From the IMG/VR virus record IMGVR_UViG_3300027834_000005, positions 283,233 to 347,232 of that record: DNA of 64,000 nucleotides, one strand, 5' to 3'. The notes under the pieces are model-generated. The model saw only the letters and a list, made by a program, of their open reading frames with translations, made no database searches and was not told the DNA's origin. The position numbers were made by a program, and so were the translations under genes. This document shows positions 2,381 to 56,388 of this stretch, piece by piece; position 1 is the first letter of the stretch; every line of letters begins with the position of its first letter.

Positions 2381-2383
2381 AGC

Positions 2384-4135: not shown

Positions 4136-4239
4136 TTACTCGTAGGGGTAAGGTGATCTTTGTGGAGGTAGGGGATATGGCCACCGCCGAAGCAGAGATG
4201 TTACTGAAGAAGCTAAAGAGAAAGCGCAGGGCTAGATAA
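4132..4239 (+). CDS. 35-aa micro-ORF (MITRRGKVIFVEVGDMATAEAEMLLKKLKRKRRAR)
   Basis: ATGA overlap with the nrdA stop; open 36 codons; below the ORF-track cutoff. Confidence 0.45.
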   Translation: MITRRGKVIFVEVGDMATAEAEMLLKKLKRKRRAR

Positions 4240-4290
4240 TCTAGTCCAGCTACACAAATAATTATACACATACAAAAAGGATAAATACAA

Positions 4291-4626
4291 ATGATTAAAG
4301 AAAAAACTACACTTATAGAAGAAGGCGCGATCATCGGAGTTAAATTTGTTTCTGGTGAAGACGTTATGGCAAAGATCGGAAAAATATTAGGTGACCAAGT
4401 AGAATTAATTCTACCTCACTCTTTGGTAACATCGCACGAAGGAGCAGCGTTTATGGCTTGGCCTTCAATGGTGAGCGATGACTCGTTTTTCGTTCATAAG
4501 AATAAAATTATGATTGCCTATCCGTTAAGAGAAGATTTCTTAAACCAATACTCTCCACTTCATGGTGAAGTTGAGGAAGAAAAAGCTGGCATCTTTATGC
4601 CGCCAGAGAAGAAGATAATTTCATAA
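4291..4626 (+). CDS. Hypothetical protein, probable Sm-like fold
   Basis: GVKFVSGEDVMAKI start resembles the K-L-x-S-G-E motif of small myovirus Sm-like proteins. Confidence 0.45.
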   Translation: MIKEKTTLIEEGAIIGVKFVSGEDVMAKIGKILGDQVELILPHSLVTSHEGAAFMAWPSMVSDDSFFVHKNKIMIAYPLREDFLNQYSPLHGEVEEEKAGIFMPPEKKIIS

Positions 4627-4919
4627 TGACTATTCCGGTATCCAGATTAGGAGATCTATCTACTCCAGACCCATGTAAAGCTCCTCCAAGAGCTAGTATA
4701 CAAGGTTCGGGTAATGTATTTGTTAATGGGATTCCGGTACATAGAGTCGGCGATGCTTGGGCACCACATGCTTGCCCAGGTTCACCTCCGCATGCAGCCA
4801 CCACCGCTGTCGGATCGGCAACAGTTTTTGTAAACGGTATGCCTATTTCAAGACTAGGTGATCTCATTAGTTGTGGTTCTACCATAGCTGTGGGTTCTGG
4901 GAATGTATTCGCGGGATAA
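4626..4919 (+). CDS. PAAR-repeat baseplate spike tip protein (T4 gp5.4-like)
   Basis: PVSRLGD / PVHRVGD / PISRLGD repeats, GSGNVFVNG, Cys/His metal ligands. Confidence 0.92.
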   Translation: MTIPVSRLGDLSTPDPCKAPPRASIQGSGNVFVNGIPVHRVGDAWAPHACPGSPPHAATTAVGSATVFVNGMPISRLGDLISCGSTIAVGSGNVFAG

Positions 4920-4921
4920 TT

Positions 4922-5743
4922 ATGGCTTATTTGAATGAAAATGGCGAGTGGGTTTTAGGCGATGCCGTAGAATCCACTACTCAGCCTGAAGAAGAATTAC
5001 GTGATGAAAATGGGTGTCTACCCATTGATCCAACCCAACCTTATAAACCGCCTTGTTTTCTTCCCAGTGAAGAAGATTGCGTGTCCCCATATGTTATAAG
5101 ACAGAAGAGTAGAGAAACAGTATCTGGATTTGTTTATAGATCAGTAGACACTGGAAAGAGACCTTATGTAAGTATGACATGGCAGTATCATAATGGCACG
5201 TCTTATGTTGATACAACTAATTATAATAATATGAAGATTACGTCAGCCGGTGCCGCTAACAAGCCAAGAGCTAAGTTCACTACATACGATGATAGTAATG
5301 GTTCCCAAGAAACTTTATACGGAAGTCATTATGAATTGACAGTTACTATACCTCCTGTGCTACCCGCTACAGTTGGAACAACTGTAACAACATACGTAAA
5401 TGCGATGAATGCCTCTACTACAGCGTTAAGTGCCAGCTCATTTGTAAGGTTGCCCAATGTTGATGAGCTAGAAAACTACACTAGAAATATTGATGGTGTC
5501 GGTGGATTTGAACCGTCCAGTATCACTACGTATTTTAGCAAGCAAAGATTGGAATATAATATTCCGGTGGATGGAGTTTCAACAGTAACAGAAATTGAAG
5601 ACCCTACGTCATTAAGGACAGGTCCATTTGAGACTATCGCTTATGAAGGGTTGACAGAAGAGAACAATGACATCGGTAGGTTAGAAGATGGTGTTGGTAA
5701 AGTAAGATATAATTATGTGACGTCCTTATGGGAAGAACTATAA
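4922..5743 (+). CDS. Hypothetical protein, possibly virion-associated
   Basis: Long ORF directly after PAAR; ATG at 4922 chosen over 4871, which overlaps PAAR. Confidence 0.5.
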   Translation: MAYLNENGEWVLGDAVESTTQPEEELRDENGCLPIDPTQPYKPPCFLPSEEDCVSPYVIRQKSRETVSGFVYRSVDTGKRPYVSMTWQYHNGTSYVDTTNYNNMKITSAGAANKPRAKFTTYDDSNGSQETLYGSHYELTVTIPPVLPATVGTTVTTYVNAMNASTTALSASSFVRLPNVDELENYTRNIDGVGGFEPSSITTYFSKQRLEYNIPVDGVSTVTEIEDPTSLRTGPFETIAYEGLTEENNDIGRLEDGVGKVRYNYVTSLWEEL

Positions 5744-5749
5744 AACGAC

Positions 5750-5778
5750 TTGACAATTAGTTAGAGAGGTACTATAAT
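5750..5778 (+). promoter_or_regulatory. Perfect-consensus sigma70 promoter
   Basis: TTGACA-17 bp-TATAAT. Confidence 0.75.
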
Positions 5779-6001
5779 GTCGTACGGTAATACAGGAAGT
5801 AATAACAGCAACTACAATGAAAGAAAGCGTAGTGGCGGTGGTGGTAAAAGTGCATACGAGATCAGAACAGATGTTTTGAAATTGGCAATGGAACTACATA
5901 ACGTCAATAGTACTGGAAAGGGTGAAGAAATTGATCCTGACAAAGTTATTGAAACAGCTACTAAGTTTAACGACTTCATTTCTAAAAAGAATGACAAATA
6001 A
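5777..6001 (+). CDS. Small conserved-type phage hypothetical protein
   Basis: SD GAGG; KSAYEIRTDVLKLAMEL resembles a small myovirus protein family. Confidence 0.6.
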   Translation: MSYGNTGSNNSNYNERKRSGGGGKSAYEIRTDVLKLAMELHNVNSTGKGEEIDPDKVIETATKFNDFISKKNDK

Positions 6002-6051
6002 CGCACAGTAACATTGATTGCTGTGCTCAATATGGTTATACACGAGGTAAC

Positions 6052-6819
6052 GTGACCATGGACATGAGTAAAGTAATCCTAGATCATATGGAAGGGTTCT
6101 TAGTCATCAGTGATATTCATGGAGAATATGACAAGATGATGGGGGCGGTTGAATATGCAAAAAGTCACTACCTTCATATAGTCTTCTTAGGGGATTTGGT
6201 TGATGGTGGTGATAAGCCATATGAAACAGTTAAAGAAGTAAAGTCTCTTTTAGACAGCGGCATGGCAACTTTTATCATGGGAAACCACGATTATAAATGG
6301 CACAGGGCTATCTTGGGAAACAAAGTAATCTTTACCGACTATATGGTTTCTACAATTTTTGATATACCTCTTGGTTCAGAACAAGACTTCATGGACACGT
6401 ACAAATATGTATGTGAGCATAAAAACACATCAGTCCATGCGATATACATGGAATGGGCATTTGTTCATGCTGCCATCGTTCCTAACGTATACACAGATGT
6501 AGATCTCACTAAGAAAGAGACTCATACTCTATTGTACGGTAGCACCAACGGTAGGCGTGATGACAGGGGATTCCCTGTGAGGTTATACGATTGGATAGAT
6601 GATATCCCAAAGGGCCACAAAGCGATTGTGGGGCACGACAGAGCGCCTATGGGCAAGACTTTTGATGGTAGGCCAGAAATGTACGGTGGTGCATTAGGCG
6701 GGTTAGCCATTTTTACAGATACCGGATGTGGAAAGAGAGACGACGGGACATTAACAGTCACTAGTCTTAAGTTTGTATACGACATCGGGTTAACTTTTGA
6801 TAGATTTATTTCATTTTGA
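6052..6819 (+). CDS. Calcineurin-like metallophosphoesterase
   Basis: ISDIHG, FLGDLVDGG, MGNHD, VHA, VGHD, DTG motifs; start may be ATG 6058. Confidence 0.88.
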   Translation: MTMDMSKVILDHMEGFLVISDIHGEYDKMMGAVEYAKSHYLHIVFLGDLVDGGDKPYETVKEVKSLLDSGMATFIMGNHDYKWHRAILGNKVIFTDYMVSTIFDIPLGSEQDFMDTYKYVCEHKNTSVHAIYMEWAFVHAAIVPNVYTDVDLTKKETHTLLYGSTNGRRDDRGFPVRLYDWIDDIPKGHKAIVGHDRAPMGKTFDGRPEMYGGALGGLAIFTDTGCGKRDDGTLTVTSLKFVYDIGLTFDRFISF

Positions 6820-6826
6820 GGTGATT

Positions 6827-7048
6827 ATGAGCGAATTATGTGATATACTTGATTCTTTCGTCAGTAATGTTTCTACCTACCCTTGCGGTAAGAGAGAGAA
6901 CGAACTAATAAAACTACGGATGGGATTGAATGACAAATACTGTCCTTTGATCGTTGAAATGACTATTGGAAGGTATGTAAAAGATGGTAAGCTTACCCAC
7001 TGCCAAAGCACTATTGATGCACTTGATGATGTTGTTCTCGTTAAATGA
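6827..7048 (+). CDS. Hypothetical protein
   Basis: SD GAGGTG before ATG 6827. Confidence 0.5.
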   Translation: MSELCDILDSFVSNVSTYPCGKRENELIKLRMGLNDKYCPLIVEMTIGRYVKDGKLTHCQSTIDALDDVVLVK

Positions 7049-7517
7049 TGGACAAATAGATCAAGAACAAGCGTACTGCATGGCTATAAATATTTACCAC
7101 GAAGCTAGATCCGAATCTATTGCAGGTCAGATAGAAGTAGCTCACGCTACTATGGAACGTGTTAGGGATAAAAGATTCCCTAGTACTATATGCGGAGTGG
7201 TATTACAAACGAACCGTGATTCTTTGGGTAGACCAAAGTTATATCGCTGTTCGTTTTCTTGGTTTTGCGATGGCAAGCCAGATGATATTGAATTTGTTAA
7301 GAAAGGCAAGTTCATGATCATAGATTACAGAAACTTTATGACGGCGTCTATGGTGGCGTTGAGAGTAATAAACGGTGACTATAAAAGCGAGTGCGAAGGT
7401 GCTAACTTTTATTATAATCCTACTTTAGCTTCACCTCGGTGGGCTAAACACTACACATTAAAATGCAGGATAGGAAATCATGCATTTCACAGACGAGAGA
7501 AAGGAAGTCTTTTATGA
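6984..7517 (+). CDS. Cell wall hydrolase, SleB/Hydrolase_2 family, with N-terminal hydrophobic segment
   Basis: CMAINIYHEARSE, FPSTICGVV, SFSW, GANFYY, IGNHAF. Confidence 0.9.
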   Translation: MVSLPTAKALLMHLMMLFSLNDGQIDQEQAYCMAINIYHEARSESIAGQIEVAHATMERVRDKRFPSTICGVVLQTNRDSLGRPKLYRCSFSWFCDGKPDDIEFVKKGKFMIIDYRNFMTASMVALRVINGDYKSECEGANFYYNPTLASPRWAKHYTLKCRIGNHAFHRREKGSLL

Positions 7518-8362
7518 AGAATTATCTTGAATTATTGCAAGATATTAAGGACAATGGAGTTGTCAAAGGAAGTAGATCAGGTAAAACCACATCCGTATTT
7601 GGCAGATCCCTTAGATGGGATCTTTCAGAAGGATTCCCCGCATTAACTACTAGAAGAGTACCCCTACGTTTCGCTTTTGAGGAAACATGGTTCTTCCTTA
7701 GTGGTAGCACAGACACTACCATCTTAGCAGACAAAAACATTCCCATTTGGGAAGGAAACACCACGCGTGAGTTTTTAGATGATAAAGGCCTTACTGATTT
7801 GCCAGTTGGCAGCTTAGGAACAGGCTATTCTCATCAGTGGAGAAACTTTGGTGGCGCTATAGGCGGTGATGACGGCATAGACCAGATCACAGAGCTTGTA
7901 GAAGGCCTTAAGAACGATCCTAACTCAAGAAGGCACATTGTGTCGGGTTGGAATCCAAAGCAGTTAGACGGCACTCCACTGCCTCCATGTCACGTATATA
8001 ATCAATACTATATTGCAGAAGGCAAATTGCACTCCACATTCATGATGAGAAGCACAGACGTTCCGTTTGGTCTCCCATTTAATATGATGGGCTATGCACT
8101 TCTTAACATGGCGATTGCTAAGCTATTAGGATTGGAAGCTGGTGACTTGGTTTACTTCGGTAATGACGTTCATATCTATGAAGAGCAGATGCCTATGGTG
8201 GATGAGATGTTACAGCGCACACCTGACGCCATGCCTACTCTAATAATCAAAAAAGATCTGAAAACGATTGACGATTTGCTGTCTATGGAGTATAATGATA
8301 TTGAGCTGAAGGACTATGCGCCACAGCCAGATATAAAAAATAAGCCAAAGATGGCGGTGTAA
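7514..8362 (+). CDS. thyA: Thymidylate synthase
   Basis: RSGKTTSVFG, RRHIV, LPPCH, RSTDVPFGLPFN, DVHIYE; ATGA overlap with upstream stop. Confidence 0.97.
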   Translation: MKNYLELLQDIKDNGVVKGSRSGKTTSVFGRSLRWDLSEGFPALTTRRVPLRFAFEETWFFLSGSTDTTILADKNIPIWEGNTTREFLDDKGLTDLPVGSLGTGYSHQWRNFGGAIGGDDGIDQITELVEGLKNDPNSRRHIVSGWNPKQLDGTPLPPCHVYNQYYIAEGKLHSTFMMRSTDVPFGLPFNMMGYALLNMAIAKLLGLEAGDLVYFGNDVHIYEEQMPMVDEMLQRTPDAMPTLIIKKDLKTIDDLLSMEYNDIELKDYAPQPDIKNKPKMAV

Positions 8363-8363
8363 T

Positions 8364-8792
8364 ATGGAAATTTCTAGGACGTTAGAGGAGCAACTCAGTT
8401 ATTTAGAGATGGCTCTTTTCAATGGAGTATTCAGTGAAGATAAGCTTGCGGATCATTTGCAATGTGTGATGCAAGATAAACTGGCAGGGCATGACCCTAT
8501 GGCATATGATTCAGCTACGTGTAAACAGTTGAACCTAAATAAATATAGCGACCTGACAGATTACAGTACCGTTTATCCAGCTAGGCATAGTATTTTTACT
8601 GAGATGGCTAATGAGATAACTATTCTGGTTAAACGTAATGAAGTATTAGAAGCCGAAGTAAAAACGTTATGCGAAGACCGTACTAGACATGATAATAGAT
8701 TACGTAATCTTGAAGATAAAGTGAATGTTTTAGTACAAACGCACAACGCTAAAGCAGAACATGAATCTGCTATACAGACGAGGATTTATTAA
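8364..8792 (+). CDS. Hypothetical protein with C-terminal coiled coil
   Basis: Tightly packed ORF; heptad-like L/V pattern near the C-terminus. Confidence 0.55.
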   Translation: MEISRTLEEQLSYLEMALFNGVFSEDKLADHLQCVMQDKLAGHDPMAYDSATCKQLNLNKYSDLTDYSTVYPARHSIFTEMANEITILVKRNEVLEAEVKTLCEDRTRHDNRLRNLEDKVNVLVQTHNAKAEHESAIQTRIY

Positions 8793-10006
8793 TGAGTGAA
8801 TTATGTACTTTTTGTGGTAAAGGAAAAGGCGAGGTTGATTTACTTATATCAGGACCGTTAGACTCTGAAGGTGTACCATCAGCCTACATTTGTAGTGAAT
8901 GTACTGGTGTCGCTGAAGAGTTCGTATTAGAAATGAAAGCGGATGAGGCTGCACTTGATAAAGTTGAGTGTACCAAGTCCATTTTGTATCCTAATGATAT
9001 TAAGAATCAATTAGATGAGTACGTGGTTGGTCAAAATAGCGCTAAAGAAAAGTTATCAGTGGCGATATTCAATCATAAGAAAAGAATTGCCATGGTTAAT
9101 CGTGGTGAGGACACAGTGGAAAAGTCAAATATTCTAATGGTAGGACCATCAGGTAGTGGTAAGACGTTATTATTGAAGACTATTACTAAGATTGCTGACG
9201 TTCCGTGCATTGTCGCTAACAGCACCTCTCTCACTGAGGCAGGTTATGTAGGGCAAGACGTAGAAAGTATCTTTGAGGACCTTCTTATGGCCGCTGACGG
9301 CGATATAGATAAGGCACAGCAAGGTATTGTGTTCTTAGATGAGATTGATAAGAAAGCTAAGGCAAAAACAGGCGGTAGTGGTAGGGATATCTCAGGCGAA
9401 GGCGTACAGCAAGCTTTATTGAAGCTAGTTGAGGGCACAGAGCTTATGATCAACCCTAATCCGAAGAATAAGCAACCATTAACGTTGGTTCCATTCAACA
9501 CTAAGGACATTTTGTTCATAGCTGGTGGTGCATTCGTTGGGTTGGATGATATAGCTAAGAAAAGAGATGCTGGCACGACCATGGGTCTATCTGCAACTCT
9601 TACTAATAGTGATGAGGCCACAGTGCCTAAGATATCATCTGAAGATTTGAGTAAGTATGGTCTTATACGGGAATTCATTGGTAGATTCCCTATCATGGTA
9701 ACTCTGCAACCACTAAGCGTGGATATGCTGAAAAGAATTATCGTGGAACCTAAGAATAGCATATTCTCTCAATTTAAAGACTTGTTTGCGGTTGAAGAAA
9801 TAGAATTGGTATTCACAGAAGAATACCTAGAGTACTTGGCTTCAAAAGCCATAGAGCACAAGACTGGGGCCAGAGGCCTTAGAAGAAGTCTTGAAGAAGA
9901 TCTTAGTGGCGTACAGTTCGATCTTAAAAAACATAAAAATGATAATGTCATACGTGTAGTCGTTGGAGACAAAGGTATCATTACATTAGAAAAGGAAGAT
10001 ACATGA
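8792..10006 (+). CDS. clpX: ATP-dependent Clp protease ATPase subunit ClpX
   Basis: N-terminal CxxC...CxxC zinc domain, GPSGSGKT, EAGYVGQDVE, LDEIDK, RDISGEGVQQALLK, GARGLR. Confidence 0.96.
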   Translation: MSELCTFCGKGKGEVDLLISGPLDSEGVPSAYICSECTGVAEEFVLEMKADEAALDKVECTKSILYPNDIKNQLDEYVVGQNSAKEKLSVAIFNHKKRIAMVNRGEDTVEKSNILMVGPSGSGKTLLLKTITKIADVPCIVANSTSLTEAGYVGQDVESIFEDLLMAADGDIDKAQQGIVFLDEIDKKAKAKTGGSGRDISGEGVQQALLKLVEGTELMINPNPKNKQPLTLVPFNTKDILFIAGGAFVGLDDIAKKRDAGTTMGLSATLTNSDEATVPKISSEDLSKYGLIREFIGRFPIMVTLQPLSVDMLKRIIVEPKNSIFSQFKDLFAVEEIELVFTEEYLEYLASKAIEHKTGARGLRRSLEEDLSGVQFDLKKHKNDNVIRVVVGDKGIITLEKEDT

Positions 10007-10239
10007 AAGGTCCAGTAAGGATAGAAGGTCTTGCGGTAGAAGTTAAAGGTAACTTCGAACGCGCATTAAGGATGTTCAGTAAAAAAGTACAAAGCTCAGG
10101 ACTCATTCGTGAGTTGAGAGAAAGAGAGCACTACGAGAAGAAGACGTCTAAGCGAAAGAAAGATAAGGCAGCTGCAAGTCGTAGAGAGCAAAAGCGCGTC
10201 AGAGATAATAGCCCTGAAGCACAACACAGAAAAAGATAA
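10003..10239 (+). CDS. rpsU: Phage-encoded 30S ribosomal protein bS21
   Basis: FERALRMFSKKVQSSGLIRELREREHYEK..KRK..KAAA; basic C-terminus; ATGA overlap with clpX. Confidence 0.88.
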   Translation: MKGPVRIEGLAVEVKGNFERALRMFSKKVQSSGLIRELREREHYEKKTSKRKKDKAAASRREQKRVRDNSPEAQHRKR

Positions 10240-10302
10240 ATACTATTATCAGTTGTTTTTTTGATCTTATTTGTAAATAAAGCTTCCCTTAACGGGGAAA
10301 GT

Positions 10303-10331
10303 TTGTTACAATAGCGCAAAATTAATATACT
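10303..10331 (+). promoter_or_regulatory. sigma70-like promoter upstream of clpS
   Basis: TTGTTA-17 bp-TATACT, followed by SD AGGAG and ATG 10352. Confidence 0.55.
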
Positions 10332-10351
10332 GATGGTAGGAGATACCGACA

Positions 10352-10657
10352 ATGAGCACACAAACATGCGAAGACACTATGGTTTTGGAAGAAGTTCAGA
10401 TTAAGGAACCTTCCACGTATCAAGTAGTTTTCTTGAACGACGATAAAACCCACATTGAATTTGTGGTGGATGTATTAGCTTCAGTATTTCACAAAACATT
10501 AGTGGATGCGGAAATGGTTACCTTACAGATTCATCATACTGGGCGTGGCATTGCCGGTGTATACAGTGAGGAAATTGCCGAGACTAAGCAAGAAGAGACT
10601 ACGAAATTGGCTCGCGCCAATGGATTCCCTCTTCAAGTTGTGGTTGAGGAAGTGTAA
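10352..10657 (+). CDS. clpS: N-degron adaptor ClpS
   Basis: YQVVFLNDDKTHIEFVVDVL, IHHTGRGIAGVYSEEIAETK, GFPL. Confidence 0.95.
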   Translation: MSTQTCEDTMVLEEVQIKEPSTYQVVFLNDDKTHIEFVVDVLASVFHKTLVDAEMVTLQIHHTGRGIAGVYSEEIAETKQEETTKLARANGFPLQVVVEEV

Positions 10658-10929
10658 TGAATAACTTTTTCATGATTTCAACATTATGTTTGTGTTTTGG
10701 ATTGGCCTCCTTACTTATGGGTAGGGAAATAGGCCATAAAGAATCACGAATAGATGCTGATGCTGTGGTAAGTGTTTCTAAACTGACAATAGTGAAGATG
10801 CATTATGCATGTGGCGGAAGCCAATACGTTAATGAATTCAATTTTGACGTCAATACACTTACGGGTGATTTCGGAACAGTCACTGTAATATGCAGAGACG
10901 GTACGGAAATTTCTTTGATAGACGAATAG
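10657..10929 (+). CDS. Hypothetical protein with N-terminal TM/signal segment
   Basis: Hydrophobic residues 4-22; TAATG coupling. Confidence 0.55.
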   Translation: MNNFFMISTLCLCFGLASLLMGREIGHKESRIDADAVVSVSKLTIVKMHYACGGSQYVNEFNFDVNTLTGDFGTVTVICRDGTEISLIDE

Positions 10930-10995
10930 TACCGTAAAATATACCGTCATTATACGTGACGTACGATGGTGGTAATTATGTACAAGGAGTGTACC

Positions 10996-11274
10996 ATGAG
11001 AACCAGAGAACATTGGAAAGAATGCTTAAGTGATGAGCCGTATATTATGGCCCAGACAGTAGTTCTAGAGTTAAAAGACATTGCTAAAAACTCAGGATAT
11101 GATCCTAGAGGAGTTAAGGTCCATAGTAAAGAAGAAGCTATGAGGCGTAACATCGGACGCGTTGGTGCATTCATAACGTGGAATGAAGGTCCCATTGGTT
11201 GGACTGATTTCTGTGATTTGCCCTTCGAGTTTTGTGATGTGTATGAAGGTTCCATGCTAATATTTTATGATTGA
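10996..11274 (+). CDS. Hypothetical protein
   Basis: SD AAGGAG before ATG 10996. Confidence 0.55.
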   Translation: MRTREHWKECLSDEPYIMAQTVVLELKDIAKNSGYDPRGVKVHSKEEAMRRNIGRVGAFITWNEGPIGWTDFCDLPFEFCDVYEGSMLIFYD

Positions 11275-11572
11275 TTTAAAAGAGGTCGGCGTTAAATACG
11301 TCGCCACAGATAAGAAAGGAAAGAAAATAACCTTCCAGATCATTTATTACGACAGTTTAATTGAGATGGTAGGTTTGAACGATTGTAACGTATACGATCT
11401 TGATGATTACCGAAAGAACGTGTACGATGCAGTGAAGGGATTCGTAGATAGCCCGTATGATATTACGTGGTATTCAGTGCCAAGCTACGAAAGTAACCTA
11501 GTTGATGCCGTAAAGGAGGCAATAACTACAGGCAACCATACCATAGTCATAGAATACACAGATATAGATTGA
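11267..11572 (+). CDS. Hypothetical protein
   Basis: Overlapping, tightly packed ORF. Confidence 0.55.
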   Translation: MIDLKEVGVKYVATDKKGKKITFQIIYYDSLIEMVGLNDCNVYDLDDYRKNVYDAVKGFVDSPYDITWYSVPSYESNLVDAVKEAITTGNHTIVIEYTDID

Positions 11573-11573
11573 G

Positions 11574-11599
11574 AAAACATGTTGAAAACATGTTATAAT
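11574..11599 (+). promoter_or_regulatory. Extended -10 promoter overlapped by a tandem palindromic repeat
   Basis: AAAACATGTT-G-AAAACATGTT; TGtTATAAT at 11591-11599. Confidence 0.55.
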
Positions 11600-11630
11600 T
11601 GATTCAGATTATCCATTAACAGAGGTATAT

Positions 11631-11864
11631 ATGACGACTCCCCAACATAACACAGGTCCTATCCCACCAGCCACAGAATGTGAGTGGCCGGTGTCGATAG
11701 ACGAGCGTGGCATAGTTTTCTGCCATAGCAAGCAAATTAAATCTGGATCAAGTTACTGCGCTGAACACCATTCAGAAGCCTATTACTCTCCATCTAACCA
11801 AGATGATATCGACTTAGCAGAAGTTGACACAAACACTGTTGAGATCGATCCACTGAGAGAATAG
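11631..11864 (+). CDS. GcrA C-terminal-domain-like protein
   Basis: CEWP...FC...YCAEH...AY matches the GcrA C-terminal pattern CxWP...FCG...YCxxH...AY; SD GAGG. Confidence 0.65.
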   Translation: MTTPQHNTGPIPPATECEWPVSIDERGIVFCHSKQIKSGSSYCAEHHSEAYYSPSNQDDIDLAEVDTNTVEIDPLRE

Positions 11865-12146
11865 ATGACGTATCATGTAACTGGGTTGGTGTCGGAGCCG
11901 ACGTTATTTTTCTCCGATGATGGCGTTTCATTGTTTACAGATCCAAACGAGAAGTGGTTTATTAGTGAAGTATTAGATCGTTTGGTATCAAAGGACACAA
12001 AAAAAGTGTATTCGGTGGAACTATTTGGTAAGAACGCCAATATAAATCCTGGTCTACGGCGCATGGAACTATCTGTGCGACTTCAAGAGATTGATGATAG
12101 TGGAGCAGATAGTATTGACGATAAGGTTTTGGTGTATAGCAAATGA
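11865..12146 (+). CDS. Hypothetical protein
   Basis: Starts immediately after the upstream stop. Confidence 0.55.
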   Translation: MTYHVTGLVSEPTLFFSDDGVSLFTDPNEKWFISEVLDRLVSKDTKKVYSVELFGKNANINPGLRRMELSVRLQEIDDSGADSIDDKVLVYSK

Positions 12147-12433
12147 TTGATGTGGCCTACGTATTTATATCACAGTTTTTTATGATTTTATTAGTGGGCC
12201 TCAATCAATTAAATGTGGTTCACAACCATATTTATATGGCAATGACGACATCACTGCTCATCAGTGTGTGTAGCTTTTATAACGTCAACGCCATATCACA
12301 GACAGAGGCATACTCACCTACATGGTTTGCTTTTATAATTGCCGGTGGTATAGCTATTGGGGCATCTATGAAATTGCATCCTATAATGGTTAGAGCATTT
12401 AACAAGGCAGATAAAAATGACACAGATACTTGA
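12143..12433 (+). CDS. Small multi-pass membrane protein
   Basis: Three hydrophobic segments; ATGA-type coupling. Confidence 0.6.
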   Translation: MIDVAYVFISQFFMILLVGLNQLNVVHNHIYMAMTTSLLISVCSFYNVNAISQTEAYSPTWFAFIIAGGIAIGASMKLHPIMVRAFNKADKNDTDT

Positions 12434-12923
12434 GAATTTATCCCTTATCGCGGCGACTACGCAAGATGGCGGTATAGGGTCAGAAAATAGATTACCATGG
12501 AAATGTCCAGAAGACATGAAATTCTTTAAAGAATTCACCACTGGTAAATCAGTTATTATGGGACATAACACGTTTGAGTCCATTGGTAGCAGAGCGCTAC
12601 CTAACAGAGACAACTATGTTGTCACACGTCATGCTAATAGCACGCATGGTAGTTTGAGGTTTATGAACTTTGATAGCATCCTTGAATTAGTTAAACTCCA
12701 CAGCGATAAAGAATTTATCGTGATAGGTGGAGAAAAAACATACGCTGCTTTTATGAAACACATCAGTAAGGCATATATAACTACGATCAAAGATTCGTGC
12801 GTATATAAAGATATGGAAATAGATACGTTCTTGCCATCGTTATCGGAGTCATTCTTTTTGCAAGGTGTACTCCGTTCCCATGACACTTGCGTTATTAGAA
12901 AATGGAGAACACCGAGAACTTAA
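12417..12923 (+). CDS. folA: Dihydrofolate reductase
   Basis: GGIGSENRLPWKCPEDMKFFK, VIMGHNTFESI, LPNR, VIGG, DTF. Confidence 0.93.
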   Translation: MTQILENLSLIAATTQDGGIGSENRLPWKCPEDMKFFKEFTTGKSVIMGHNTFESIGSRALPNRDNYVVTRHANSTHGSLRFMNFDSILELVKLHSDKEFIVIGGEKTYAAFMKHISKAYITTIKDSCVYKDMEIDTFLPSLSESFFLQGVLRSHDTCVIRKWRTPRT

Positions 12924-12925
12924 CA

Positions 12926-13168
12926 ATGAATACTTACACTCACATATATAACATCGTTGGTAAGCCTACATGTACAGTAACTGTACATGAAGATTGCGCA
13001 GGCATGCATACATTTGCATCTAGCTCTCTAAAAAAATCGTCAAATAACCTAGCTAGTCCGAATATATTGGAGTTGTTAGTGTGGGTTAGCGAAAGAAAGA
13101 ATGCTGAGTTGGAACTAAAGGAGTCAACGCGTAATGAAGGTGAGATTGAAGGAAAGTTCAAAGTTTGA
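12926..13168 (+). CDS. Hypothetical protein
   Basis: SD GAGA; ATG 12926 follows the DHFR stop. Confidence 0.45.
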   Translation: MNTYTHIYNIVGKPTCTVTVHEDCAGMHTFASSSLKKSSNNLASPNILELLVWVSERKNAELELKESTRNEGEIEGKFKV

Positions 13169-13790
13169 TGATCTCCAAAGTATAAAAAGACGTTACTATG
13201 GTTACTTGGACGACACTAATATAAGGGCGCTGGCTTTTATGTTAACTGTCCCTATTGCCATTAGTCATTTCATTAGATATTGCTTGCATAAATTTAAGTT
13301 TAGTGATAAAATAGTCATAGAGTCAAACGACGTGAAGAATGCCGATATAACAATGGCTAAAATTATAGTGCCATTATTGGAAAGGTTAAATGTTGAGAAG
13401 CAAGGTGTGCCTCCAGTTGATGACATGGACGTACCGGATGCTATTATGGATATAGGCGTTAAGTTCCATGGTATAGACGTGTCTCGTAGCTTTAAGTGGG
13501 AATATGTCATGACTAGGATGATTATATCATTCAAGTACGTGTCTAATGAGTTAGCCGTAACATCCTGCGAGGAAGGTCTAGGAGACATTAGAATACCTGA
13601 TGTTCTTAAGATACACACTGAGTTGATTCATGAAGAGATGGACACATTAAAGTCTCTTGAAGAAACACACGGCAAGATTAAGATGGAAGACTACTATGAG
13701 TTCATGGAAGTGGACCCGAACAATATTGAAAGGGTAGTCCAAGAAGGTCTTGATTTATTCTCCAAATATTACTTGAGGTTATGGACATAA
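13134..13790 (+). CDS. Conserved-type phage hypothetical protein (start uncertain)
   Basis: DITMAKIIVPLL...KQGVP..D..DVP...W..VM..MI.SF pattern seen in T4-like phage proteins. Confidence 0.55.
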   Translation: MKVRLKESSKFDDLQSIKRRYYGYLDDTNIRALAFMLTVPIAISHFIRYCLHKFKFSDKIVIESNDVKNADITMAKIIVPLLERLNVEKQGVPPVDDMDVPDAIMDIGVKFHGIDVSRSFKWEYVMTRMIISFKYVSNELAVTSCEEGLGDIRIPDVLKIHTELIHEEMDTLKSLEETHGKIKMEDYYEFMEVDPNNIERVVQEGLDLFSKYYLRLWT

Positions 13791-14053
13791 TGTACATTAA
13801 CGATGAAGACAAAAAAGATACAGCAAACAGCACACTAGGTATATACTACATGGGCGTATTACTTATTTTATTGCTCGCAGTATGTGGGTATCAGCGCTAT
13901 ATGTTAGATGATATGGGATATGGCAATAAGGAATACTCTGAGGTTAGAGAACTATGCGTGGAAGCGCACAAGGAAGGTATCGGATGTAAAGTTGGCTTTG
14001 GCCCTTACGCCGAGTTTGAGCAAATGGAGTACACCAAGGAAGATGAGCGATAA
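13781..14053 (+). CDS. Hypothetical membrane protein
   Basis: Single TM segment (residues ~20-37). Confidence 0.5.
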   Translation: MDIMYINDEDKKDTANSTLGIYYMGVLLILLLAVCGYQRYMLDDMGYGNKEYSEVRELCVEAHKEGIGCKVGFGPYAEFEQMEYTKEDER

Positions 14054-20359: not shown

Positions 20360-21004
20360 ATGAATACTCCATTATCTAGCTTAGTACCTATGGTCGTTGA
20401 ACAAACCCCTAACGGCGAACGCTCTTACGATATCTTCTCACGTTTACTTAAAGAACGTATCATCTACGTAAGTGGTGAAGTCCATGACGGTATGGCTGAT
20501 ATTGTTACTGCGCAAATGATGTTCCTTGAAGCGGAAAATCCTGAAAGCGATATCAATATGTACATCAATTCTCCTGGTGGTTCTGTTACTGCTGGCTTAG
20601 CCATCTATAACACCGCTCAATTTATCGAATGTGACGTGAAAACTATCGTTACTGGTCAAGCAGCATCAATGGGTAGCTTCTTAGCTCAATCAGGTACTGC
20701 CGGTAAGCGTTTTGTAATGGGCGAATCACGTACTATGATCCATCGTGTTAGTGCCGGTACAGCCAACACACAAGGTTCTATCCACGTTATGCGTGAAGAG
20801 TTGGAAGATATCAAACGTTCGGTTGAAGAAGGTGAGCGTTTGAACGAACGTTTGACTCAACTGTATGTTCAGCATAACTCTGTGGGTAAAACTTACGAAG
20901 AATTGTTCGAAACCATGCGTTACGACACGTTCTTATCAGCAGAAGATGCTGTTAAAGGCGGATTCGCTGACCGTGTAATCAGATCACGTGCCGACTTAAC
21001 CTAA
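20360..21004 (+). CDS. clpP: ATP-dependent Clp protease proteolytic subunit ClpP
   Basis: [34 protein letters not shown], triad GQAASMG (Ser), MIH (His), YDTFLSA (Asp). Confidence 0.96.
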
Positions 21005-52955: not shown

Positions 52956-53354
52956 ATGCCAAAGACAGAAACAGAAAAACAACAAACCTACTTAAAAAAT
53001 ATGGTCCTTAGTCTTATAGGTGCTATCATATCTGCCGTGTGCCTTGCATTCATCCTAGGACGTAACGACGGTCTCCGTAACGCAAAACTAGACGTAGACA
53101 CAGAGAAAGCAAAATATATCATTCTAGCCGGAGAATACCAATCTCTTAAAGATGAGAATGCATTGTACTATAATGCTATTCGTAGATGGGATGCATCTAC
53201 CGACGAAAACTTCGTTATGAGTGTTGACTACCTTAATACCCTTGATAAGAAGTTCGAATCCTCTTCTGTAATAAAAAAGAAAACAACTATTGAAAACATG
53301 TCTAAAGTGTGTGAAGATATTACCTCACTTAAAAAACAAGGCATGCTTAAATGA
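52956..53354 (+). CDS. Membrane-anchored hypothetical protein
   Basis: TM at residues ~17-34 then helical region. Confidence 0.55.
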   Translation: MPKTETEKQQTYLKNMVLSLIGAIISAVCLAFILGRNDGLRNAKLDVDTEKAKYIILAGEYQSLKDENALYYNAIRRWDASTDENFVMSVDYLNTLDKKFESSSVIKKKTTIENMSKVCEDITSLKKQGMLK

Positions 53355-54139
53355 ATCCATATACCGTACTAGGCGTAAGAAGCAATGCCAGCGAAAAAGA
53401 AATAAAGAAAGCTTATAAGAAGCTTAGATCCGAGAACCACCCTGATAAGATGATCGCTAAAGGTGCGTCTGATTCGGAAGTGAAAAAAGCTACGGACAAG
53501 TCTCAAAGCATTCAAGAAGCTTACGATAAAATTAAGAACGGTGAATACGTTGAAAGTTCTTTTGAATTTAAGCCAAAGACAAAATGGCATGAATCTAGCA
53601 GCAAGTATTCAGGCAGACATGGCTATCAGCAGTATTATAATGATCGTAATGAAAGTCCGAAAACTTATACATTAGAAACCACAGTAGAACAATTATACGA
53701 TGGTTTTACAATTGACGCTACTTCTTCAGGTCTATGTGAATTCAATGTACCTAAAGGTGCGAACCACGGAACACACATGTTCGTGATGAATAAAAGAATT
53801 AAAATAAATGTTGTGAATGACCCAAAATCTAGATATACTGTTCACCGTAATACAGTGTATACAGGTGCTAAAATATCAACGATTGATGCAACATTGGGAA
53901 CCGAGATTACATTCGAACACTTAAACGGAAAATCGTATAAAGTGAAGGTTCCTAAAGGTACTGTAGATAAGAAAGAAATTGTTATGCCTGAGCTAGGTCT
54001 GTACAATAGAGACACTGGTAAGCGTGATAATTTAATCTTTATCGTTTACGTAGAAACTATTTCAATATTTGATAAAGAAACAATTGACATGCTTACGAAG
54101 AAGGGTTACTATAAACACTCTTACAGCATTGGCAAGTAA
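53351..54139 (+). CDS. J-domain co-chaperone (J domain plus DnaJ/CbpA-type C-terminal domain, no zinc finger)
   Basis: NPYTVLGV...EIKKAYKKL...HPDK; C-terminal IDATLGTEI...L.G..YKVKVPKGT...GL...G...GL. Confidence 0.88.
   Translation: MNPYTVLGVRSNASEKEIKKAYKKLRSENHPDKMIAKGASDSEVKKATDKSQSIQEAYDKIKNGEYVESSFEFKPKTKWHESSSKYSGRHGYQQYYNDRNESPKTYTLETTVEQLYDGFTIDATSSGLCEFNVPKGANHGTHMFVMNKRIKINVVNDPKSRYTVHRNTVYTGAKISTIDATLGTEITFEHLNGKSYKVKVPKGTVDKKEIVMPELGLYNRDTGKRDNLIFIVYVETISIFDKETIDMLTKKGYYKHSYSIGK
54084..54112 (+). promoter_or_regulatory. sigma70 promoter inside the J-protein 3' end, upstream of clpA
   Basis: TTGACA-17 bp-TACTAT. Confidence 0.6.
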
Positions 54140-54165: not shown

Positions 54166-56388
54166 ATGTCTAAACGTGATATCGAAAACATTGTAACAAC
54201 AGCAGTTGAATTGGCACGCTCTAACAAGCACGAATATTTAACAGTAGAGCATTTACTTTGGGCGGTTCTGGACGACAAGGGCGTAGTGCAAGTTATTACT
54301 GATATTGGTGGCAAGCCTACCCGTATCAAGGGTGATTTGGACAAGCACTTAGCCAGTGACTTATCCAACTTATTGCCATCACATGAACATGGTGACGACC
54401 CGAAGAAAACATCTTCTGTTGACCGTATCATGCGTCGTTCTTTAGCGCAGCATATGTTCTCTAACAGCCAAGACATCACAGGCTTGAACGTGTTGGTTTC
54501 CATCATGAGCGAAGATCGTTCACAGGCAGTAGCCATTTTAACAGCGCACAAAGTTACTAAAGACGCGGTGTTGGCGAAATTGAAAGGTAAAAGCAAGAAA
54601 AAACCAGGTGAAGAAACAGATCTTGAAAAATACTGTAAAAACCTTAACGAGCAAGCCGAAGAAGGTAAAATCGATCCGGTTATTGGTCGTGAAACTGAAA
54701 TCAAAGATATGGTCGAAATGATCGCACGTCGCAAGAAAAGCAACGTAATCTTCACGGGTCAACCAGGTGTTGGTAAGACTGCGATTGTTGAAGGCTTTGC
54801 CAAAGAAATCTCTGAAGGTAACGTGCCTGAAGCATTGGAAGACAAAATAGTTTTGTCTCTTGATATCGGCGCGTTAATGGCTGGTACTAAGTATCGCGGC
54901 GAATTTGAAGAGCGTATGAAAAACGTTCTGGATGAAATCGAAGAGAAAGGTAACGTTGTTCTTTTCATCGATGAAATCCACATGATCATGGGTGCCGGTG
55001 CGGGTTCTGGTGGTTCAGTTGACGCAAGTAATTTATTGAAGCCTGCGTTGGCAAGCGGTCGTATGATTTGTGTTGGTGCTACTACTGATGATGAGTACGC
55101 AACTCACTTCGAAAAAGATCGTGCCTTAATGCGTCGTTTCCAACGTTTGGATGTGCAAGCGCCAAGCGTAGAAGATTCCAAGCGTATCTTGGAAGGTGTT
55201 AAGAAGTACTACGAAGAGTTCCATGGCGTAACTTACGATGCCGATACACTGAACATGTGTGTTGACTTGTCTGAGCGTTATGTTAAGACTCGCTTACTTC
55301 CTGATAAAGCCCTTGATATCATGGATTCGGCTGGTGCAAAAGCGAAGTTGGATAAATTGCCTACGGTAACAATCGATATGGTTCTTGAACGCACAGCCAA
55401 GATGGCGAAAATGCCTCTTGACATGTTAGACCTGAAAGAAAATGAATCATTGTTAAATCTTGATAGCCGTGTAAAAGACATCGTCTTCGGCCAAGATGAA
55501 GCGATTGATCTAATGGTTGAATCCATTGCTCTTTCTAAGTCCGGTCTTCGTGAAACGAATAAGCCTATTGGTTCATTCCTGTTCGTTGGTCCGACTGGTA
55601 CTGGTAAGACTCACGTTTGTAAGACTCTTGCTGAGCAAATGGGTGTATCTCTGGTTAAATTCGACATGTCAGAGTACATGGAGAAACACAGTGTGGCTCG
55701 TTTGATTGGTGCACCTCCAGGTTATGCTGGTCATGGTGAAGGTGAAGCAGGTTCAGGCCAGCTTATCTCACAAGTTGAGAAAAACCCTAACTGCGTGTTG
55801 TTGTTGGATGAGATCGAAAAAGCTGATCCAGCGGTGTTAACTGTATTGTTACAGGTGATGGAAGACGGCGTACTTACTGGCGGTACTGGTAAGAAAGTTG
55901 ACTTCTCTAACTGTATCATCATCTTCACCAGTAACTTGGGTGCGGCTGCGGCAGAGAAGCGTTCAATCGGTTTCGGTAACGATGCGAATGAAGGTAAGAT
56001 CAAAGAAGCAGTTAAGAAGCACTTAACTCCTGAGTTCCGTAACCGTATCGACCATATGGTTGAATTCAAGCCTCTTGGCGAAGAAGAAATGGGTTACATC
56101 GTTGTTAAGTCTATCGATGACTTGAACAAAATGGTTGAAGCAAAAGACATTACTGTCAGCGTATCATTAGCTGCTCGTGAATGGCTTGCTACAAACGGCT
56201 ATGACAGAACAATGGGTGCTCGTCCTTACAAGCGCTTATTTGAGAACTTAGTTAAAAAGCCATTAAGTAAGAAAATCATCGGTGGTGAGCTTATCGACGG
56301 CGGAAAAGTGTCCGTGGGCGTGAAAGACGATGAGCTGACTATCAGCGTCACCAAAGCCAAGGTTGTGACTCCTGCCGCCGAGGCATAA
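54166..56388 (+). CDS. clpA: ATP-dependent Clp protease ATPase subunit ClpA
   Basis: N-domain HEYLTVEHLL, NBD1 GQPGVGKT/KYRGEFE/FIDEIH, NBD2 GPTGTGKT/LLDEIEK, IGF loop, no middle domain. Confidence 0.95.
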   Translation: MSKRDIENIVTTAVELARSNKHEYLTVEHLLWAVLDDKGVVQVITDIGGKPTRIKGDLDKHLASDLSNLLPSHEHGDDPKKTSSVDRIMRRSLAQHMFSNSQDITGLNVLVSIMSEDRSQAVAILTAHKVTKDAVLAKLKGKSKKKPGEETDLEKYCKNLNEQAEEGKIDPVIGRETEIKDMVEMIARRKKSNVIFTGQPGVGKTAIVEGFAKEISEGNVPEALEDKIVLSLDIGALMAGTKYRGEFEERMKNVLDEIEEKGNVVLFIDEIHMIMGAGAGSGGSVDASNLLKPALASGRMICVGATTDDEYATHFEKDRALMRRFQRLDVQAPSVEDSKRILEGVKKYYEEFHGVTYDADTLNMCVDLSERYVKTRLLPDKALDIMDSAGAKAKLDKLPTVTIDMVLERTAKMAKMPLDMLDLKENESLLNLDSRVKDIVFGQDEAIDLMVESIALSKSGLRETNKPIGSFLFVGPTGTGKTHVCKTLAEQMGVSLVKFDMSEYMEKHSVARLIGAPPGYAGHGEGEAGSGQLISQVEKNPNCVLLLDEIEKADPAVLTVLLQVMEDGVLTGGTGKKVDFSNCIIIFTSNLGAAAAEKRSIGFGNDANEGKIKEAVKKHLTPEFRNRIDHMVEFKPLGEEEMGYIVVKSIDDLNKMVEAKDITVSVSLAAREWLATNGYDRTMGARPYKRLFENLVKKPLSKKIIGGELIDGGKVSVGVKDDELTISVTKAKVVTPAAEA

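What the first reader, a model, noticed from the sequence alone, without database searches (positions are those of the whole stretch)
8792..10006. Phage ClpX with rewritten recognition loops
Seen: ATPase motifs and the GYVG pore loop are intact. The RKH loop (E. coli PPQGGRKHP) is replaced by NPNPKNKQP (about 9452-9478), and the ClpP-docking IGF is MGL (9581-9589). Established: RKH helps recognise the ssrA tag C-terminus, and the IGF loop docks on ClpP. Inference: an unfoldase that ignores ssrA-tagged proteins and targets other substrates, with altered ClpP preference. Its Arg codons are mostly AGA, unlike clpA/clpP/clpS.
Basis: partly seen in the sequence, partly recalled or inferred. Interest (0 to 1): 0.6.

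Follow-up and report, generated by a model that had tools for sequence, protein, structure and literature searches.

The report
Jumbo-phage ClpX lacking ssrA-recognition residues
A giant marine phage carries its own working copy of the protein-unfolding motor ClpX in which three of the six residues that bacterial ClpX uses to grip ssrA-tagged proteins are changed, a trait shared by its phage relatives, so it probably serves other substrates; its ClpP-docking motif is only mildly unusual.

Summary
Window 8792-10006 (+) encodes a 404-aa ClpX: it passes the NCBIfam equivalog cut-off, has the ClpX fold, and keeps the zinc finger, Walker A/B, Arg finger, sensor-2 and GYVG. NPNPKNKQP (9452-9478) replaces PPQGGRKHP, and MGL (9581-9589) replaces IGF.

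New points:
- The pore-2 threonine (E. coli T199) is Gly. So three of the six experimentally critical ssrA-contact residues are lost (T199G, R228N, H230Q). K229 and P231 are kept.
- All 80 sampled bacterial species have Y-V-T-V-R-K-H at these positions.
- The changed loop is conserved in 10 metagenomic relatives (54-72% identity).
- The cultured relative, Pseudomonas phage PA5oct, also lacks RKH and T199.
- The gene sits in a conserved thyA-clpX-S21-clpS...clpP block.
- An independent strain shows 34 synonymous and 2 non-synonymous differences.

MGL is a mild variant. MGF is found in 26 of 80 bacteria and LGL in one, and E. coli ClpA uses IGL, so "altered ClpP preference" is unsupported.

The AGA bias is real but typical of this genome. 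clpA and clpP are the outliers, with a capsid-gene-like bias that PA5oct clpP shares.

Loss of canonical ssrA recognition is well-founded but untested. The phage also encodes a permuted tmRNA with tag ...YAQAA.

The parts
8792..10006 (+). clpX coding sequence (404 aa plus stop)
   Evidence: ORF. NCBIfam ClpX equivalogs above cut-off. PDB ClpX matches at E = 1e-94. AlphaFold2 model with pLDDT 87.6 matches ClpX chains at TM 0.72-0.88.
8804..8923 (+). N-terminal C4 zinc-binding domain (C5, C8, C34, C37), with a 7-residue insertion relative to E. coli
   Evidence: Pfam zf-C4_ClpX scores 32.2 bits (cut-off 27) over residues 5-44. All four Cys are invariant in alignment A2. The insertion is visible in the alignment.
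9143..9166 (+). Walker A motif, G118-T125
   Evidence: G118, P119, G121, G123, K124 and T125 are invariant columns.
9242..9253 (+). Pore-1 loop GYVG (151-154), intact
9332..9349 (+). Walker B region FLDEID (D183, E184)
   Evidence: Invariant columns.
9356..9391 (+). Pore-2 loop (189-200): G197 in place of E. coli T199, and I200 in place of V202
   Evidence: Alignment to E. coli ClpX and site table. The role of T199 and V202 is from PMC7652416.
9452..9478 (+). RKH-equivalent loop tip NPNPKNKQP (221-229): R228 to N, K229 kept, H230 to Q
   Evidence: DNA and alignment. The model shows a beta-hairpin, strands 217-220 and 233-236. The loop is conserved as N-P-[DN]-P-x-[NC]-[KR]-x-P in P0001-P0010. 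Positions 9463 and 9475 differ synonymously in a second strain.
9581..9589 (+). ClpP-docking tripeptide MGL (264-266), at the E. coli IGF position
   Evidence: DNA and alignment. It lies in a low-pLDDT flexible loop, 262-280. Variation is tabulated.
9683..9685 (+). Arg finger R298 (E. coli R307)
   Evidence: Invariant column.
9872..9874 (+). Sensor-2 Arg R361 in GARGLR
   Evidence: Invariant column.
8364..8792 (+). 142-aa ORF of unknown function whose stop overlaps the clpX start (TAATG)
   Evidence: No Pfam or PHROG family. A 140-aa counterpart is present in L084 but not in L086 or PA5oct.
10003..10239 (+). Ribosomal protein S21 homologue; its start overlaps the clpX stop (ATGA)
   Evidence: Pfam Ribosomal_S21 at 57.6 bits and TIGR00030 at 54.8 bits. 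Junction.
10352..10657 (+). ClpS adaptor homologue
   Evidence: Pfam ClpS at 95.7 bits.
20360..21004 (+). ClpP peptidase, the presumed docking partner. Ser-His-Asp triad kept; 10-residue insertion in the handle region
   Evidence: Pfam CLP_protease at 193 bits. Alignment to E. coli ClpP. 66% identical to the ClpP of relative L086. Site table.
53351..54139 (+). DnaJ-like co-chaperone, immediately upstream of clpA
   Evidence: Pfam DnaJ and DnaJ_C.
54166..56388 (+). ClpA unfoldase, with IGF where E. coli ClpA has IGL
   Evidence: Pfam domains. E. coli ClpA at E = 1.5e-192, with the alignment showing krsigfgn against rksiglih.

Best explanation
This is a functional, vertically inherited ClpX unfoldase of a PA5oct-like (Arenbergviridae-related) marine jumbo phage. 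It belongs to a conserved phage proteolysis module: clpX-S21-clpS, clpP about 11 kb downstream, and dnaJ-clpA further on.

The motor and the ClpP-docking elements are intact. It most likely forms a hexamer that feeds unfolded proteins into ClpP, most simply the phage's own.

Its substrate-selection surface has been remodelled at the top of the pore. The two RKH-loop residues and the pore-2 threonine that hold the Ala-Ala-COO- end of the ssrA tag in bacterial ClpX are N, Q and G. Inference: it binds ssrA-type tags poorly by the canonical closed-pore mode. It instead selects other substrates through its conserved N-P-x-P-x-N-K-x-P loop, its retained zinc-finger domain and unknown adaptors.

Shown here: identity, fold, motifs, lineage-wide conservation, purifying selection and synteny. 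Inferred, not shown: hexamer and ClpP binding, loss of ssrA recognition, and the substrates.
For: Identity and fold.

Critical residues:
- E. coli Y153, V154, T199, V202, R228 and H230 correspond to Y, V, G, I, N and Q here.
- Mutating T199, V202 or H230 abolishes efficient GFP-ssrA degradation. R228A shifts specificity away from ssrA. Human ClpX, which lacks T199 and H230, ignores ssrA unless given the E. coli loops (PMC7652416).
- All 80 bacterial ClpX from 80 species carry Y-V-T-V-R-K-H, so the change is a real departure.

Not decay:
- The loop is conserved across 10 relatives at 54-72% identity.
- The 11-sequence clade has 100% SH-aLRT support.
- A strain from another study differs by 34 synonymous and 2 non-synonymous changes. 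Both changes inside the loop are synonymous.

Lineage trait:
- PA5oct ClpX has G199, no RKH and MGF.
- The same gene order (RNR, thyA, clpX, S21, clpS, clpP) is seen in PA5oct, L084 and L086.

Docking is plausible:
- The tripeptide fits [LIVM]-G-[FLIV], with M and L both seen in bacterial ClpX, and E. coli ClpA uses IGL.
- A bona fide ClpP with an intact triad is encoded nearby.
- A separate T4 gp21-type prohead protease exists, so ClpP is not the head protease.
Against: There is no biochemical evidence, and the only RKH-less ClpX with tested specificity is the human one.

The loop keeps K229 and P231 and remains basic, and pore-1 is intact. Recognition of some C-terminal Ala-Ala tags is therefore not excluded.

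The phage encodes its own tmRNA, whose tag ends in Ala-Ala. That could mean tagged proteins do matter to its proteases.

The ClpX-ClpP complex prediction gave no verdict, so it counts neither way.

The raw association of T199 with RKH (36 with both, 50 with neither, 11 mixed) rests on only 2 phylogenetically independent contrasts.

The host and its ClpP are unknown.
Confidence: 0.65

Rival explanations
1. ClpP-independent remodeller. The phage ClpX works mainly as a stand-alone unfoldase or chaperone, as E. coli ClpX does on MuA or lambda O complexes. It would act in phage replication or virion assembly, and the MGL loop matters little.
For: Published suggestions for jumbo-phage ClpX and ClpA point to assembly, translocation or replication roles (PMC7824862; PMC6102473). 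The third position of the tripeptide drifts within the clade (F, L, V). The complex prediction gave no support, though it gave no evidence against either.
Against: A hydrophobic-Gly-hydrophobic tripeptide is kept in every clade member and in PA5oct. A true ClpP is conserved in synteny. The two roles are not mutually exclusive.
Confidence: 0.15
2. Interference with host proteolysis. The phage ClpX competes for host ClpP or mixes into host ClpX hexamers. This would redirect or blunt host ClpXP, for example to protect phage proteins or block ClpXP-dependent defences, rather than run a pathway of its own.
For: M-G-x and x-G-L tripeptides work on ordinary bacterial ClpP. The ATPase core is 44-47% identical to bacterial ClpX. 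Loss of ssrA contacts would make a mixed or competing ring blind to the main host substrate class.
Against: The phage brings its own ClpP, ClpA and ClpS, which fits a self-contained system better. All catalytic motifs are kept under purifying selection, whereas a pure decoy could lose ATPase activity. The host is unknown.
Confidence: 0.1
3. The specificity is essentially host-like. The loop changes are neutral or compensated, and the enzyme still degrades ssrA-type (Ala-Ala-COO-) tags, including the phage tmRNA's ...YAQAA tag.
For: The loop keeps K229, P231 and a net positive charge, and pore-1 is intact. The phage encodes a permuted tmRNA whose tag ends in Ala-Ala.
Against: T199 is Gly, and even T199A or T199V cripples recognition in E. 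coli. H230 is Gln and R228 is Asn. These positions are invariant in 80 of 80 bacteria. Three giant phages that keep RKH and T199 show that retention is possible where it is needed.
Confidence: 0.1

Closest known systems
ClpX of Pseudomonas jumbo phage vB_PaeM_PA5oct (MK797984, EST35_0255; Arenbergviridae)
   Same: Same gene block: RNR, metallophosphoesterase, thyA, clpX, S21, clpS, clpP. The major capsid protein is 82% identical. ClpX also has Gly at the T199 position, no RKH, and Met as the first residue of the docking tripeptide (MGF). clpP is CGY-biased while clpX is not.
   Different: ClpX is only 42% identical. The loop sequence differs (ELNSNSMFSP against NPNPKNKQP). PA5oct has MGF rather than MGL, no tmRNA was found, and the host is a soil or clinical pseudomonad rather than a marine one.
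E. coli ClpX (PDB 6WRF and 8E91), the ssrA-recognising prototype
   Same: Same architecture and fold: zinc-finger domain, large and small AAA+ domains, GYVG, RKH-type beta-hairpin, flexible docking loop. TM 0.72-0.88, about 44% identity.
   Different: T199G, V202I, R228N, H230Q and IGF to MGL. The pore-2 loop is one residue shorter, the docking loop about 4 residues shorter, and the zinc finger carries a 7-residue insertion.
Human mitochondrial CLPX
   Same: [quoted passage not shown] It is the functional precedent for the inference made here.
   Different: It has Leu at both positions rather than Gly and Gln, is about 40% identical by structure alignment, and is a different lineage. No claim of common descent of the trait is made.
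RKH-retaining ClpX of other giant marine phages (IMG/VR loci L004-L023, L030, L054)
   Same: Also viral, also followed by S21 and clpS. Three of their genomes also carry permuted tmRNAs and their own ClpP.
   Different: They keep Y-V-T-V-R-K-H and IGF. Their ClpP has no handle insertion. Their tmRNA tags end in LAA or MAA rather than QAA.
Clp sets of Rak2-like jumbo phages such as Agrobacterium phage Atu_ph07
   Same: ClpX, ClpA next to DnaJ, ClpP and ClpS are encoded together and have been described in print (PMC6102473). ClpX is 44% identical.
   Different: Atu_ph07 ClpX keeps R-K-N with Ser at the T199 position and has FGF. The published discussion does not address the recognition loops.

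Membership tests
[quoted passage not shown] | Full-length match to curated equivalog models above their cut-offs | tested here: met
   NF003745 at 429.2 bits (cut-off 359) and TIGR00382 at 392.8 bits (cut-off 370.75).
[quoted passage not shown] | N-terminal C4 zinc-binding domain | tested here: met
   PF06689 at 32.2 bits (cut-off 27). C5, C8, C34 and C37 are invariant.
[quoted passage not shown] | Single AAA+ module with Walker A, Walker B, Arg finger and sensor-2 | tested here: met
   G118-T125, D183/E184, R298 and R361 fall in invariant columns. PF07724 and PF00004 match.
[quoted passage not shown] | GYVG pore-1 loop | tested here: met
   GYVG at residues 151-154.
[quoted passage not shown] | ClpX fold | tested here: met
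   Model pLDDT 87.6. The best PDB matches are all ClpX chains, TM 0.72-0.88.
[quoted passage not shown] | Hydrophobic-Gly-hydrophobic ClpP-docking tripeptide (IGF type) | tested here: met
   MGL at the IGF position. Bacterial variants are IGF, MGF, LGF, VGF, LGL, MGI and IGY. E. coli ClpA has IGL.
[quoted passage not shown] | Physical binding to ClpP and hexamer formation | tested here: inconclusive
   The complex prediction (2 ClpP plus ClpX 62-312) scored 0.11 against a mark of 0.32, giving no verdict. This needs biochemistry.
ssrA-recognising bacterial-type ClpX (E. coli specificity class) | RKH loop with R228 and H230 | tested here: not met
   N226 and Q228 stand at these positions; K229 is kept. 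All 80 bacteria have RKH.
ssrA-recognising bacterial-type ClpX (E. coli specificity class) | Pore-2 loop T199 (hydrogen bond to the tag's alpha-carboxylate) and V202 | tested here: not met
   G197 stands for T199, and I200 for V202, which is a conservative change. Roles are from PMC7652416.
ssrA-recognising bacterial-type ClpX (E. coli specificity class) | Degradation of ssrA-tagged substrates | not testable with these tools
   Requires GFP-ssrA degradation assays.
PA5oct-like (Arenbergviridae-related) jumbo-phage Clp module | Synteny thyA - clpX - S21 - clpS - clpP in a gp23-type jumbo phage | tested here: met
   Window gene order matches PA5oct and the metagenomic relatives L084 and L086. 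The capsid protein is 81.7% identical to that of PA5oct.

The most novel reading that the evidence does not exclude
Loss of the ssrA-recognition triad (T199, R228, H230) may be a selected, lineage-wide adaptation of phage-encoded ClpX. Together with the divergent phage ClpP, it would make a private protease that is blind to the flood of tmRNA-tagged proteins during infection. It would instead be aimed at a dedicated degron read by the conserved N-P-x-P-x-N-K-x-P loop. In this phage, tagged products, including those of its own tmRNA (tag ...YAQAA), would be left to host ClpXP or the phage ClpAP. The tight clpX-S21 coupling could further link the system to remodelling of the translation apparatus.
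Probability: 0.25. Interest if true: 0.65.

Novelty: new variant of a known kind. Interest (0 to 1): 0.45.

Why it matters
ClpX specificity is one of the best-understood cases of degron recognition, and the six contact residues were invariant in all 80 bacterial species sampled.

Phage lineages that carry ClpX with these residues changed, under purifying selection and next to their own ClpP, ClpS, ClpA and sometimes a tmRNA, are natural specificity-switch experiments. They offer a direct way to ask what a virus gains from running its own AAA+ protease.

PA5oct is cultured and has the same trait, so the question can be tested at the bench now.

The practical value is modest: better annotation of phage "ClpX" genes (the PHROG family has no assigned function) and possible new degron-unfoldase pairs as tools.

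Tried and rejected
1. Complex prediction of two phage ClpP chains with ClpX 62-312 gave no verdict (0.02 and 0.11 against a mark of 0.32). It is not used as evidence either way.

2. Co-variation between the ClpX tripeptide and the ClpP pocket was rejected. By my count on the alignment, ClpP differs from E. coli at positions 48, 60, 92 and 114. But position 60 is N, Q, S, H or F in phage ClpPs that pair with IGF-bearing ClpX, and the handle insertion does not track the tripeptide.

3. Recent horizontal origin of clpA and clpP, as an explanation of the codon difference, was rejected.
- clpP is syntenic and 57-66% identical across relatives.
- PA5oct clpP shows the same CGY bias.
- The bias is shared with the major capsid gene.

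4. ClpP as the head-maturation protease, as some automated annotations and PHROG hits suggest, was rejected. A gp21-type prohead protease sits next to gp23, and this ClpP aligns end to end with cellular ClpP.

5. Repeated independent loss of RKH is not established. The best tree needs 5 changes and well-supported branches force 2. But an AU test does not reject a single clade of all non-RKH sequences (p = 0.28).

6. Phylogenetically independent covariation of T199 with RKH has too few contrasts to test: 2 on supported branches.

7. No close relative (above 50% identity) was found in IMG/VR or in GenBank phages. The relatives came from metagenome protein clusters.

8. No RNA run holds the gene, so expression is unknown. 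Whether the second strain also has MGL could not be read, because 17 differences were not listed. The 90% cluster holds no variants.

9. No SmpB or SspB was found in the phage genome.

10. Literature searches found no paper discussing RKH or pore-2 loops of phage ClpX.
Full report
WHAT IS THERE

The window is the last 64 kb of a 347,232-bp IMG/VR virus record that CheckV rates 94% complete. The same ClpX and ClpP proteins also occur on a 410-kb contig elsewhere. The genome has a T4-type gp23 capsid protein 81.7% identical to that of Pseudomonas jumbo phage PA5oct. It also has a gp21-type prohead protease, 37 tRNAs and a tmRNA. The sequencing runs that hold the DNA are marine.

The ORF at 8792-10006 (+) encodes a 404-aa protein that is an unambiguous ClpX:
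- Both NCBIfam ClpX equivalogs score above their cut-offs.
- Pfam finds the zinc-finger, AAA_2 and D2-small domains.
- E. coli ClpX matches at E = 1e-94.
- An AlphaFold2 model (pLDDT 87.6) matches solved ClpX chains at TM 0.72-0.88.

CHECK OF THE OBSERVATION

The DNA at 9452-9478 reads NPNPKNKQP and at 9581-9589 reads MGL. The HMMER alignment puts these opposite PPQGGRKHP and IGF of E. coli ClpX. Walker A, Walker B, the Arg finger, sensor-2 and GYVG are all present in invariant columns.

In the model the loop is the tip of a beta-hairpin (strands 217-220 and 233-236). That is the position of the RKH hairpin. MGL lies in a low-confidence flexible loop, as IGF loops do.

- The loop is not wholly rewritten. 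The changes are R228 to N and H230 to Q, while K229 and P231 are kept and the length is about the same.

WHY THE RESIDUES MATTER

Fei et al. 2020 (PMC7652416) show that six ClpX side chains hold the ssrA tag in the closed-pore recognition complex: Y153, V154, T199, V202, R228 and H230.
- The T199 hydroxyl hydrogen-bonds the tag's terminal carboxylate.
- T199A, T199V, V202A and H230A raise KM for GFP-ssrA to the 100-micromolar range.
- R228A shifts specificity away from ssrA.
- Human ClpX has Leu at 199 and 230. It ignores ssrA unless given the E. coli pore-2 and RKH loops.

The phage protein has non-conservative changes at three of these six positions.

HOW UNUSUAL IT IS

In 80 ClpX genes from 80 bacterial species, spanning many phyla, all 80 have Y-V-T-V-R-K-H at these positions.

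Among the best 120 database homologues:
- The ten closest (54-72% identity, all from metagenomes) share G199 and a conserved N-P-[DN]-P-x-[NC]-[KR]-x-P loop.
- Most of the rest are RKH-type.
- Some 20 others have the loop deleted or changed.

Among 80 IMG/VR viral loci, 24 keep the full bacterial set and 56 do not. This sample is biased, because it was selected through the peptide DEIDKKAK.

The cultured relative PA5oct has G199, no RKH and MGF.

On a maximum-likelihood tree the window's protein sits in an 11-member clade with 100% SH-aLRT support. That clade groups, less firmly, with PA5oct and other RKH-less sequences.

I cannot claim repeated independent loss. The tree needs 5 changes, but an AU test does not reject a single origin (p = 0.28). 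The association between T199 and RKH has only two independent contrasts.

IT IS A LIVE GENE

- The altered loop is at least as conserved as the rest of the protein across the clade.
- A second strain, from a marine-sediment metagenome of a different study, covers the gene. Of its 36 listed differences, 34 are synonymous and 2 are conservative (S30A, V79I). Both differences inside the loop are synonymous.
- The start is preceded by GAGGA and overlaps the stop of the upstream ORF (TAATG). The stop overlaps the start of the S21 gene (ATGA).

CONTEXT

The block thyA - clpX - S21 - clpS, with clpP about 5-11 kb downstream, recurs in metagenomic relatives (L084, L086) and in PA5oct. Across 85 fetched loci, clpS lies within 10 kb of clpX in 70, clpP in 41 and S21 in 24.

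The window also encodes ClpP (20360-21004) and DnaJ followed by ClpA (53351-56388). Jumbo-phage Clp sets of this kind are already described (PMC6102473; PMC7824862). No paper found discusses their recognition loops.

THE DOCKING MOTIF

MGL was unique among about 280 sequences examined, but each part of it is ordinary:
- M-G-F is the second commonest bacterial form (26 of 80).
- L-G-L, M-G-I and I-G-Y occur in bacteria.
- Clade members have IGF, MGF, IGV, VGV and VGF.
- E. coli ClpA docks on ClpP through IGL, whereas this phage's ClpA has IGF at that position.

One ClpP can evidently accept both endings.

The phage ClpP has an intact Ser-His-Asp triad and an N-terminal half very like E. coli ClpP. 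It also has a 10-residue insertion in the handle, and Asn where E. coli has Y60. These features are shared by a large marine family. They also occur with IGF-bearing ClpX, so they do not explain MGL.

A complex prediction gave no verdict. "Altered ClpP preference" is therefore unsupported, though not excluded.

CODONS

But the genome median for AGA plus AGG is 0.63, and the phage carries two tRNA-Arg(TCT) genes, so clpX is typical.

clpA and clpP sit in the lowest tail. With them are the major capsid gene, a PepA-type aminopeptidase, an NAPRTase and a MoxR/VWA pair. PA5oct shows the same clpP-versus-clpX split, and clpP is syntenic and 57-66% identical across relatives. The bias therefore looks like a maintained, expression-linked trait. 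It does not look like a mark of different origin.

A RELEVANT FIND OUTSIDE THE WINDOW

The phage encodes a permuted (two-piece) tmRNA:
- It scores 85.5 bits on Rfam beta_tmRNA (threshold 84) and 81.6 bits on tmRNA_permuted (threshold 47).
- Its tag is ANEELYAQAA.
- No SmpB or SspB was found in the genome.

Three other giant viral genomes whose ClpX keeps T199 and RKH also carry permuted tmRNAs. Their tags end in LALAA, MAMAA and VALAA. PA5oct has none. With four genomes this is only a lead. It does show that the phage invests in tagging while its own ClpX lacks the canonical tag-reading residues.

MOST LIKELY MECHANISM

This is a functional phage ClpX hexamer that docks through MGL on ClpP, most simply the phage's own. 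It uses a remodelled pore entrance and its zinc-finger domain to pick substrates other than ssrA-tagged proteins. Tagged proteins would fall to host ClpXP or to ClpAP.

My confidence in each step:
- Working ClpX: about 0.95.
- Poor at canonical ssrA recognition: about 0.7.
- Changed ClpP preference: about 0.2.

Rivals, each with its refuting experiment given in its own section:
- A ClpP-independent remodeller.
- Interference with host ClpXP.
- Essentially host-like specificity.

VERDICT

Phage ClpX genes, and this gene block, are already known, with PA5oct annotated in 2019-2020.

New here is the finding that this lineage, and many other viral ClpX, lack the residues that define ssrA recognition. 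Those residues were invariant in every sampled bacterium. This makes it a new variant of a known kind, of moderate interest, and directly testable in PA5oct.

Noticed in passing
Own genome outside the window: G000:C1:229770-230138 (locus L003:1261-1639): Permuted (two-piece) tmRNA with tag ANEELYAQAA. Rfam beta_tmRNA scores 85.5 bits (threshold 84) and tmRNA_permuted 81.6 bits (threshold 47). No SmpB was found in the genome. Three other ClpX-encoding giant viral genomes have permuted tmRNAs with tags ending LALAA, MAMAA and VALAA.
   Followed up: partly
window 10003-10239 and 10352-10657: Ribosomal protein S21 gene whose ATG overlaps the clpX stop (ATGA), followed by clpS. The clpX-S21-clpS order recurs in PA5oct, in the metagenomic relatives and in many IMG/VR loci, whether or not the ClpX keeps RKH.
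   Followed up: partly
window 20360-21004: ClpP with a 10-residue insertion in the handle region and Asn at the E. coli Y60 position. About 120 marine homologues at roughly 70% identity share these features, some on contigs of 240-357 kb. Giant phages with RKH-type ClpX have ClpP without the insertion.
   Followed up: partly
window 53351-54139 and 54166-56388: DnaJ-like gene directly upstream of a full-length ClpA, the same pairing reported for Atu_ph07 gp293 and gp292. The phage ClpA has IGF where E. coli ClpA has IGL, the reverse of the ClpX situation.
   Followed up: partly
Own genome, for example G000:C1:161981-163165 (gp23), 225245-226669 (M17 aminopeptidase), 218828-220495 (NAPRTase), 9900-14372 (MoxR-like AAA plus VWA/DUF2201): A dozen ORFs use almost only CGT or CGC for Arg, against a genome median of 63% AGA/AGG. 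clpA and clpP belong to this set. A PepA-type aminopeptidase alongside two Clp proteases hints at breakdown of proteins down to amino acids.
   Followed up: partly
window 8364-8792: 142-aa ORF with a coiled-coil-like C-terminal half and no family match. Its stop overlaps the clpX start (TAATG). A 140-aa counterpart is in relative L084 but is absent from L086 and PA5oct. It could be a ClpX partner or adaptor.
   Followed up: no
window 11631-11864: 77-aa ORF with a near-threshold match to the C-terminal part of the GcrA cell-cycle regulator (26.3 bits, cut-off 26.9). The counterpart in L084 is also flagged GcrA. This may hint at an alphaproteobacterial host.
   Followed up: no
window 56922-60713: 1263-aa protein with collagen triple-helix repeats near its C-terminus, probably a fibre or decoration protein.
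   Followed up: no
window 1388-8362 and 12417-12923: Nucleotide-metabolism cluster around clpX: RNR small and large subunits, two metallophosphoesterases (6052-6819 and 13908-14867), a cell-wall hydrolase (6984-7517), thymidylate synthase and dihydrofolate reductase. It is collinear with PA5oct.
   Followed up: partly
Whole record: The identical ClpX and ClpP proteins are on record on a 410,284-bp contig, so the 347-kb record may be incomplete.
   Followed up: no
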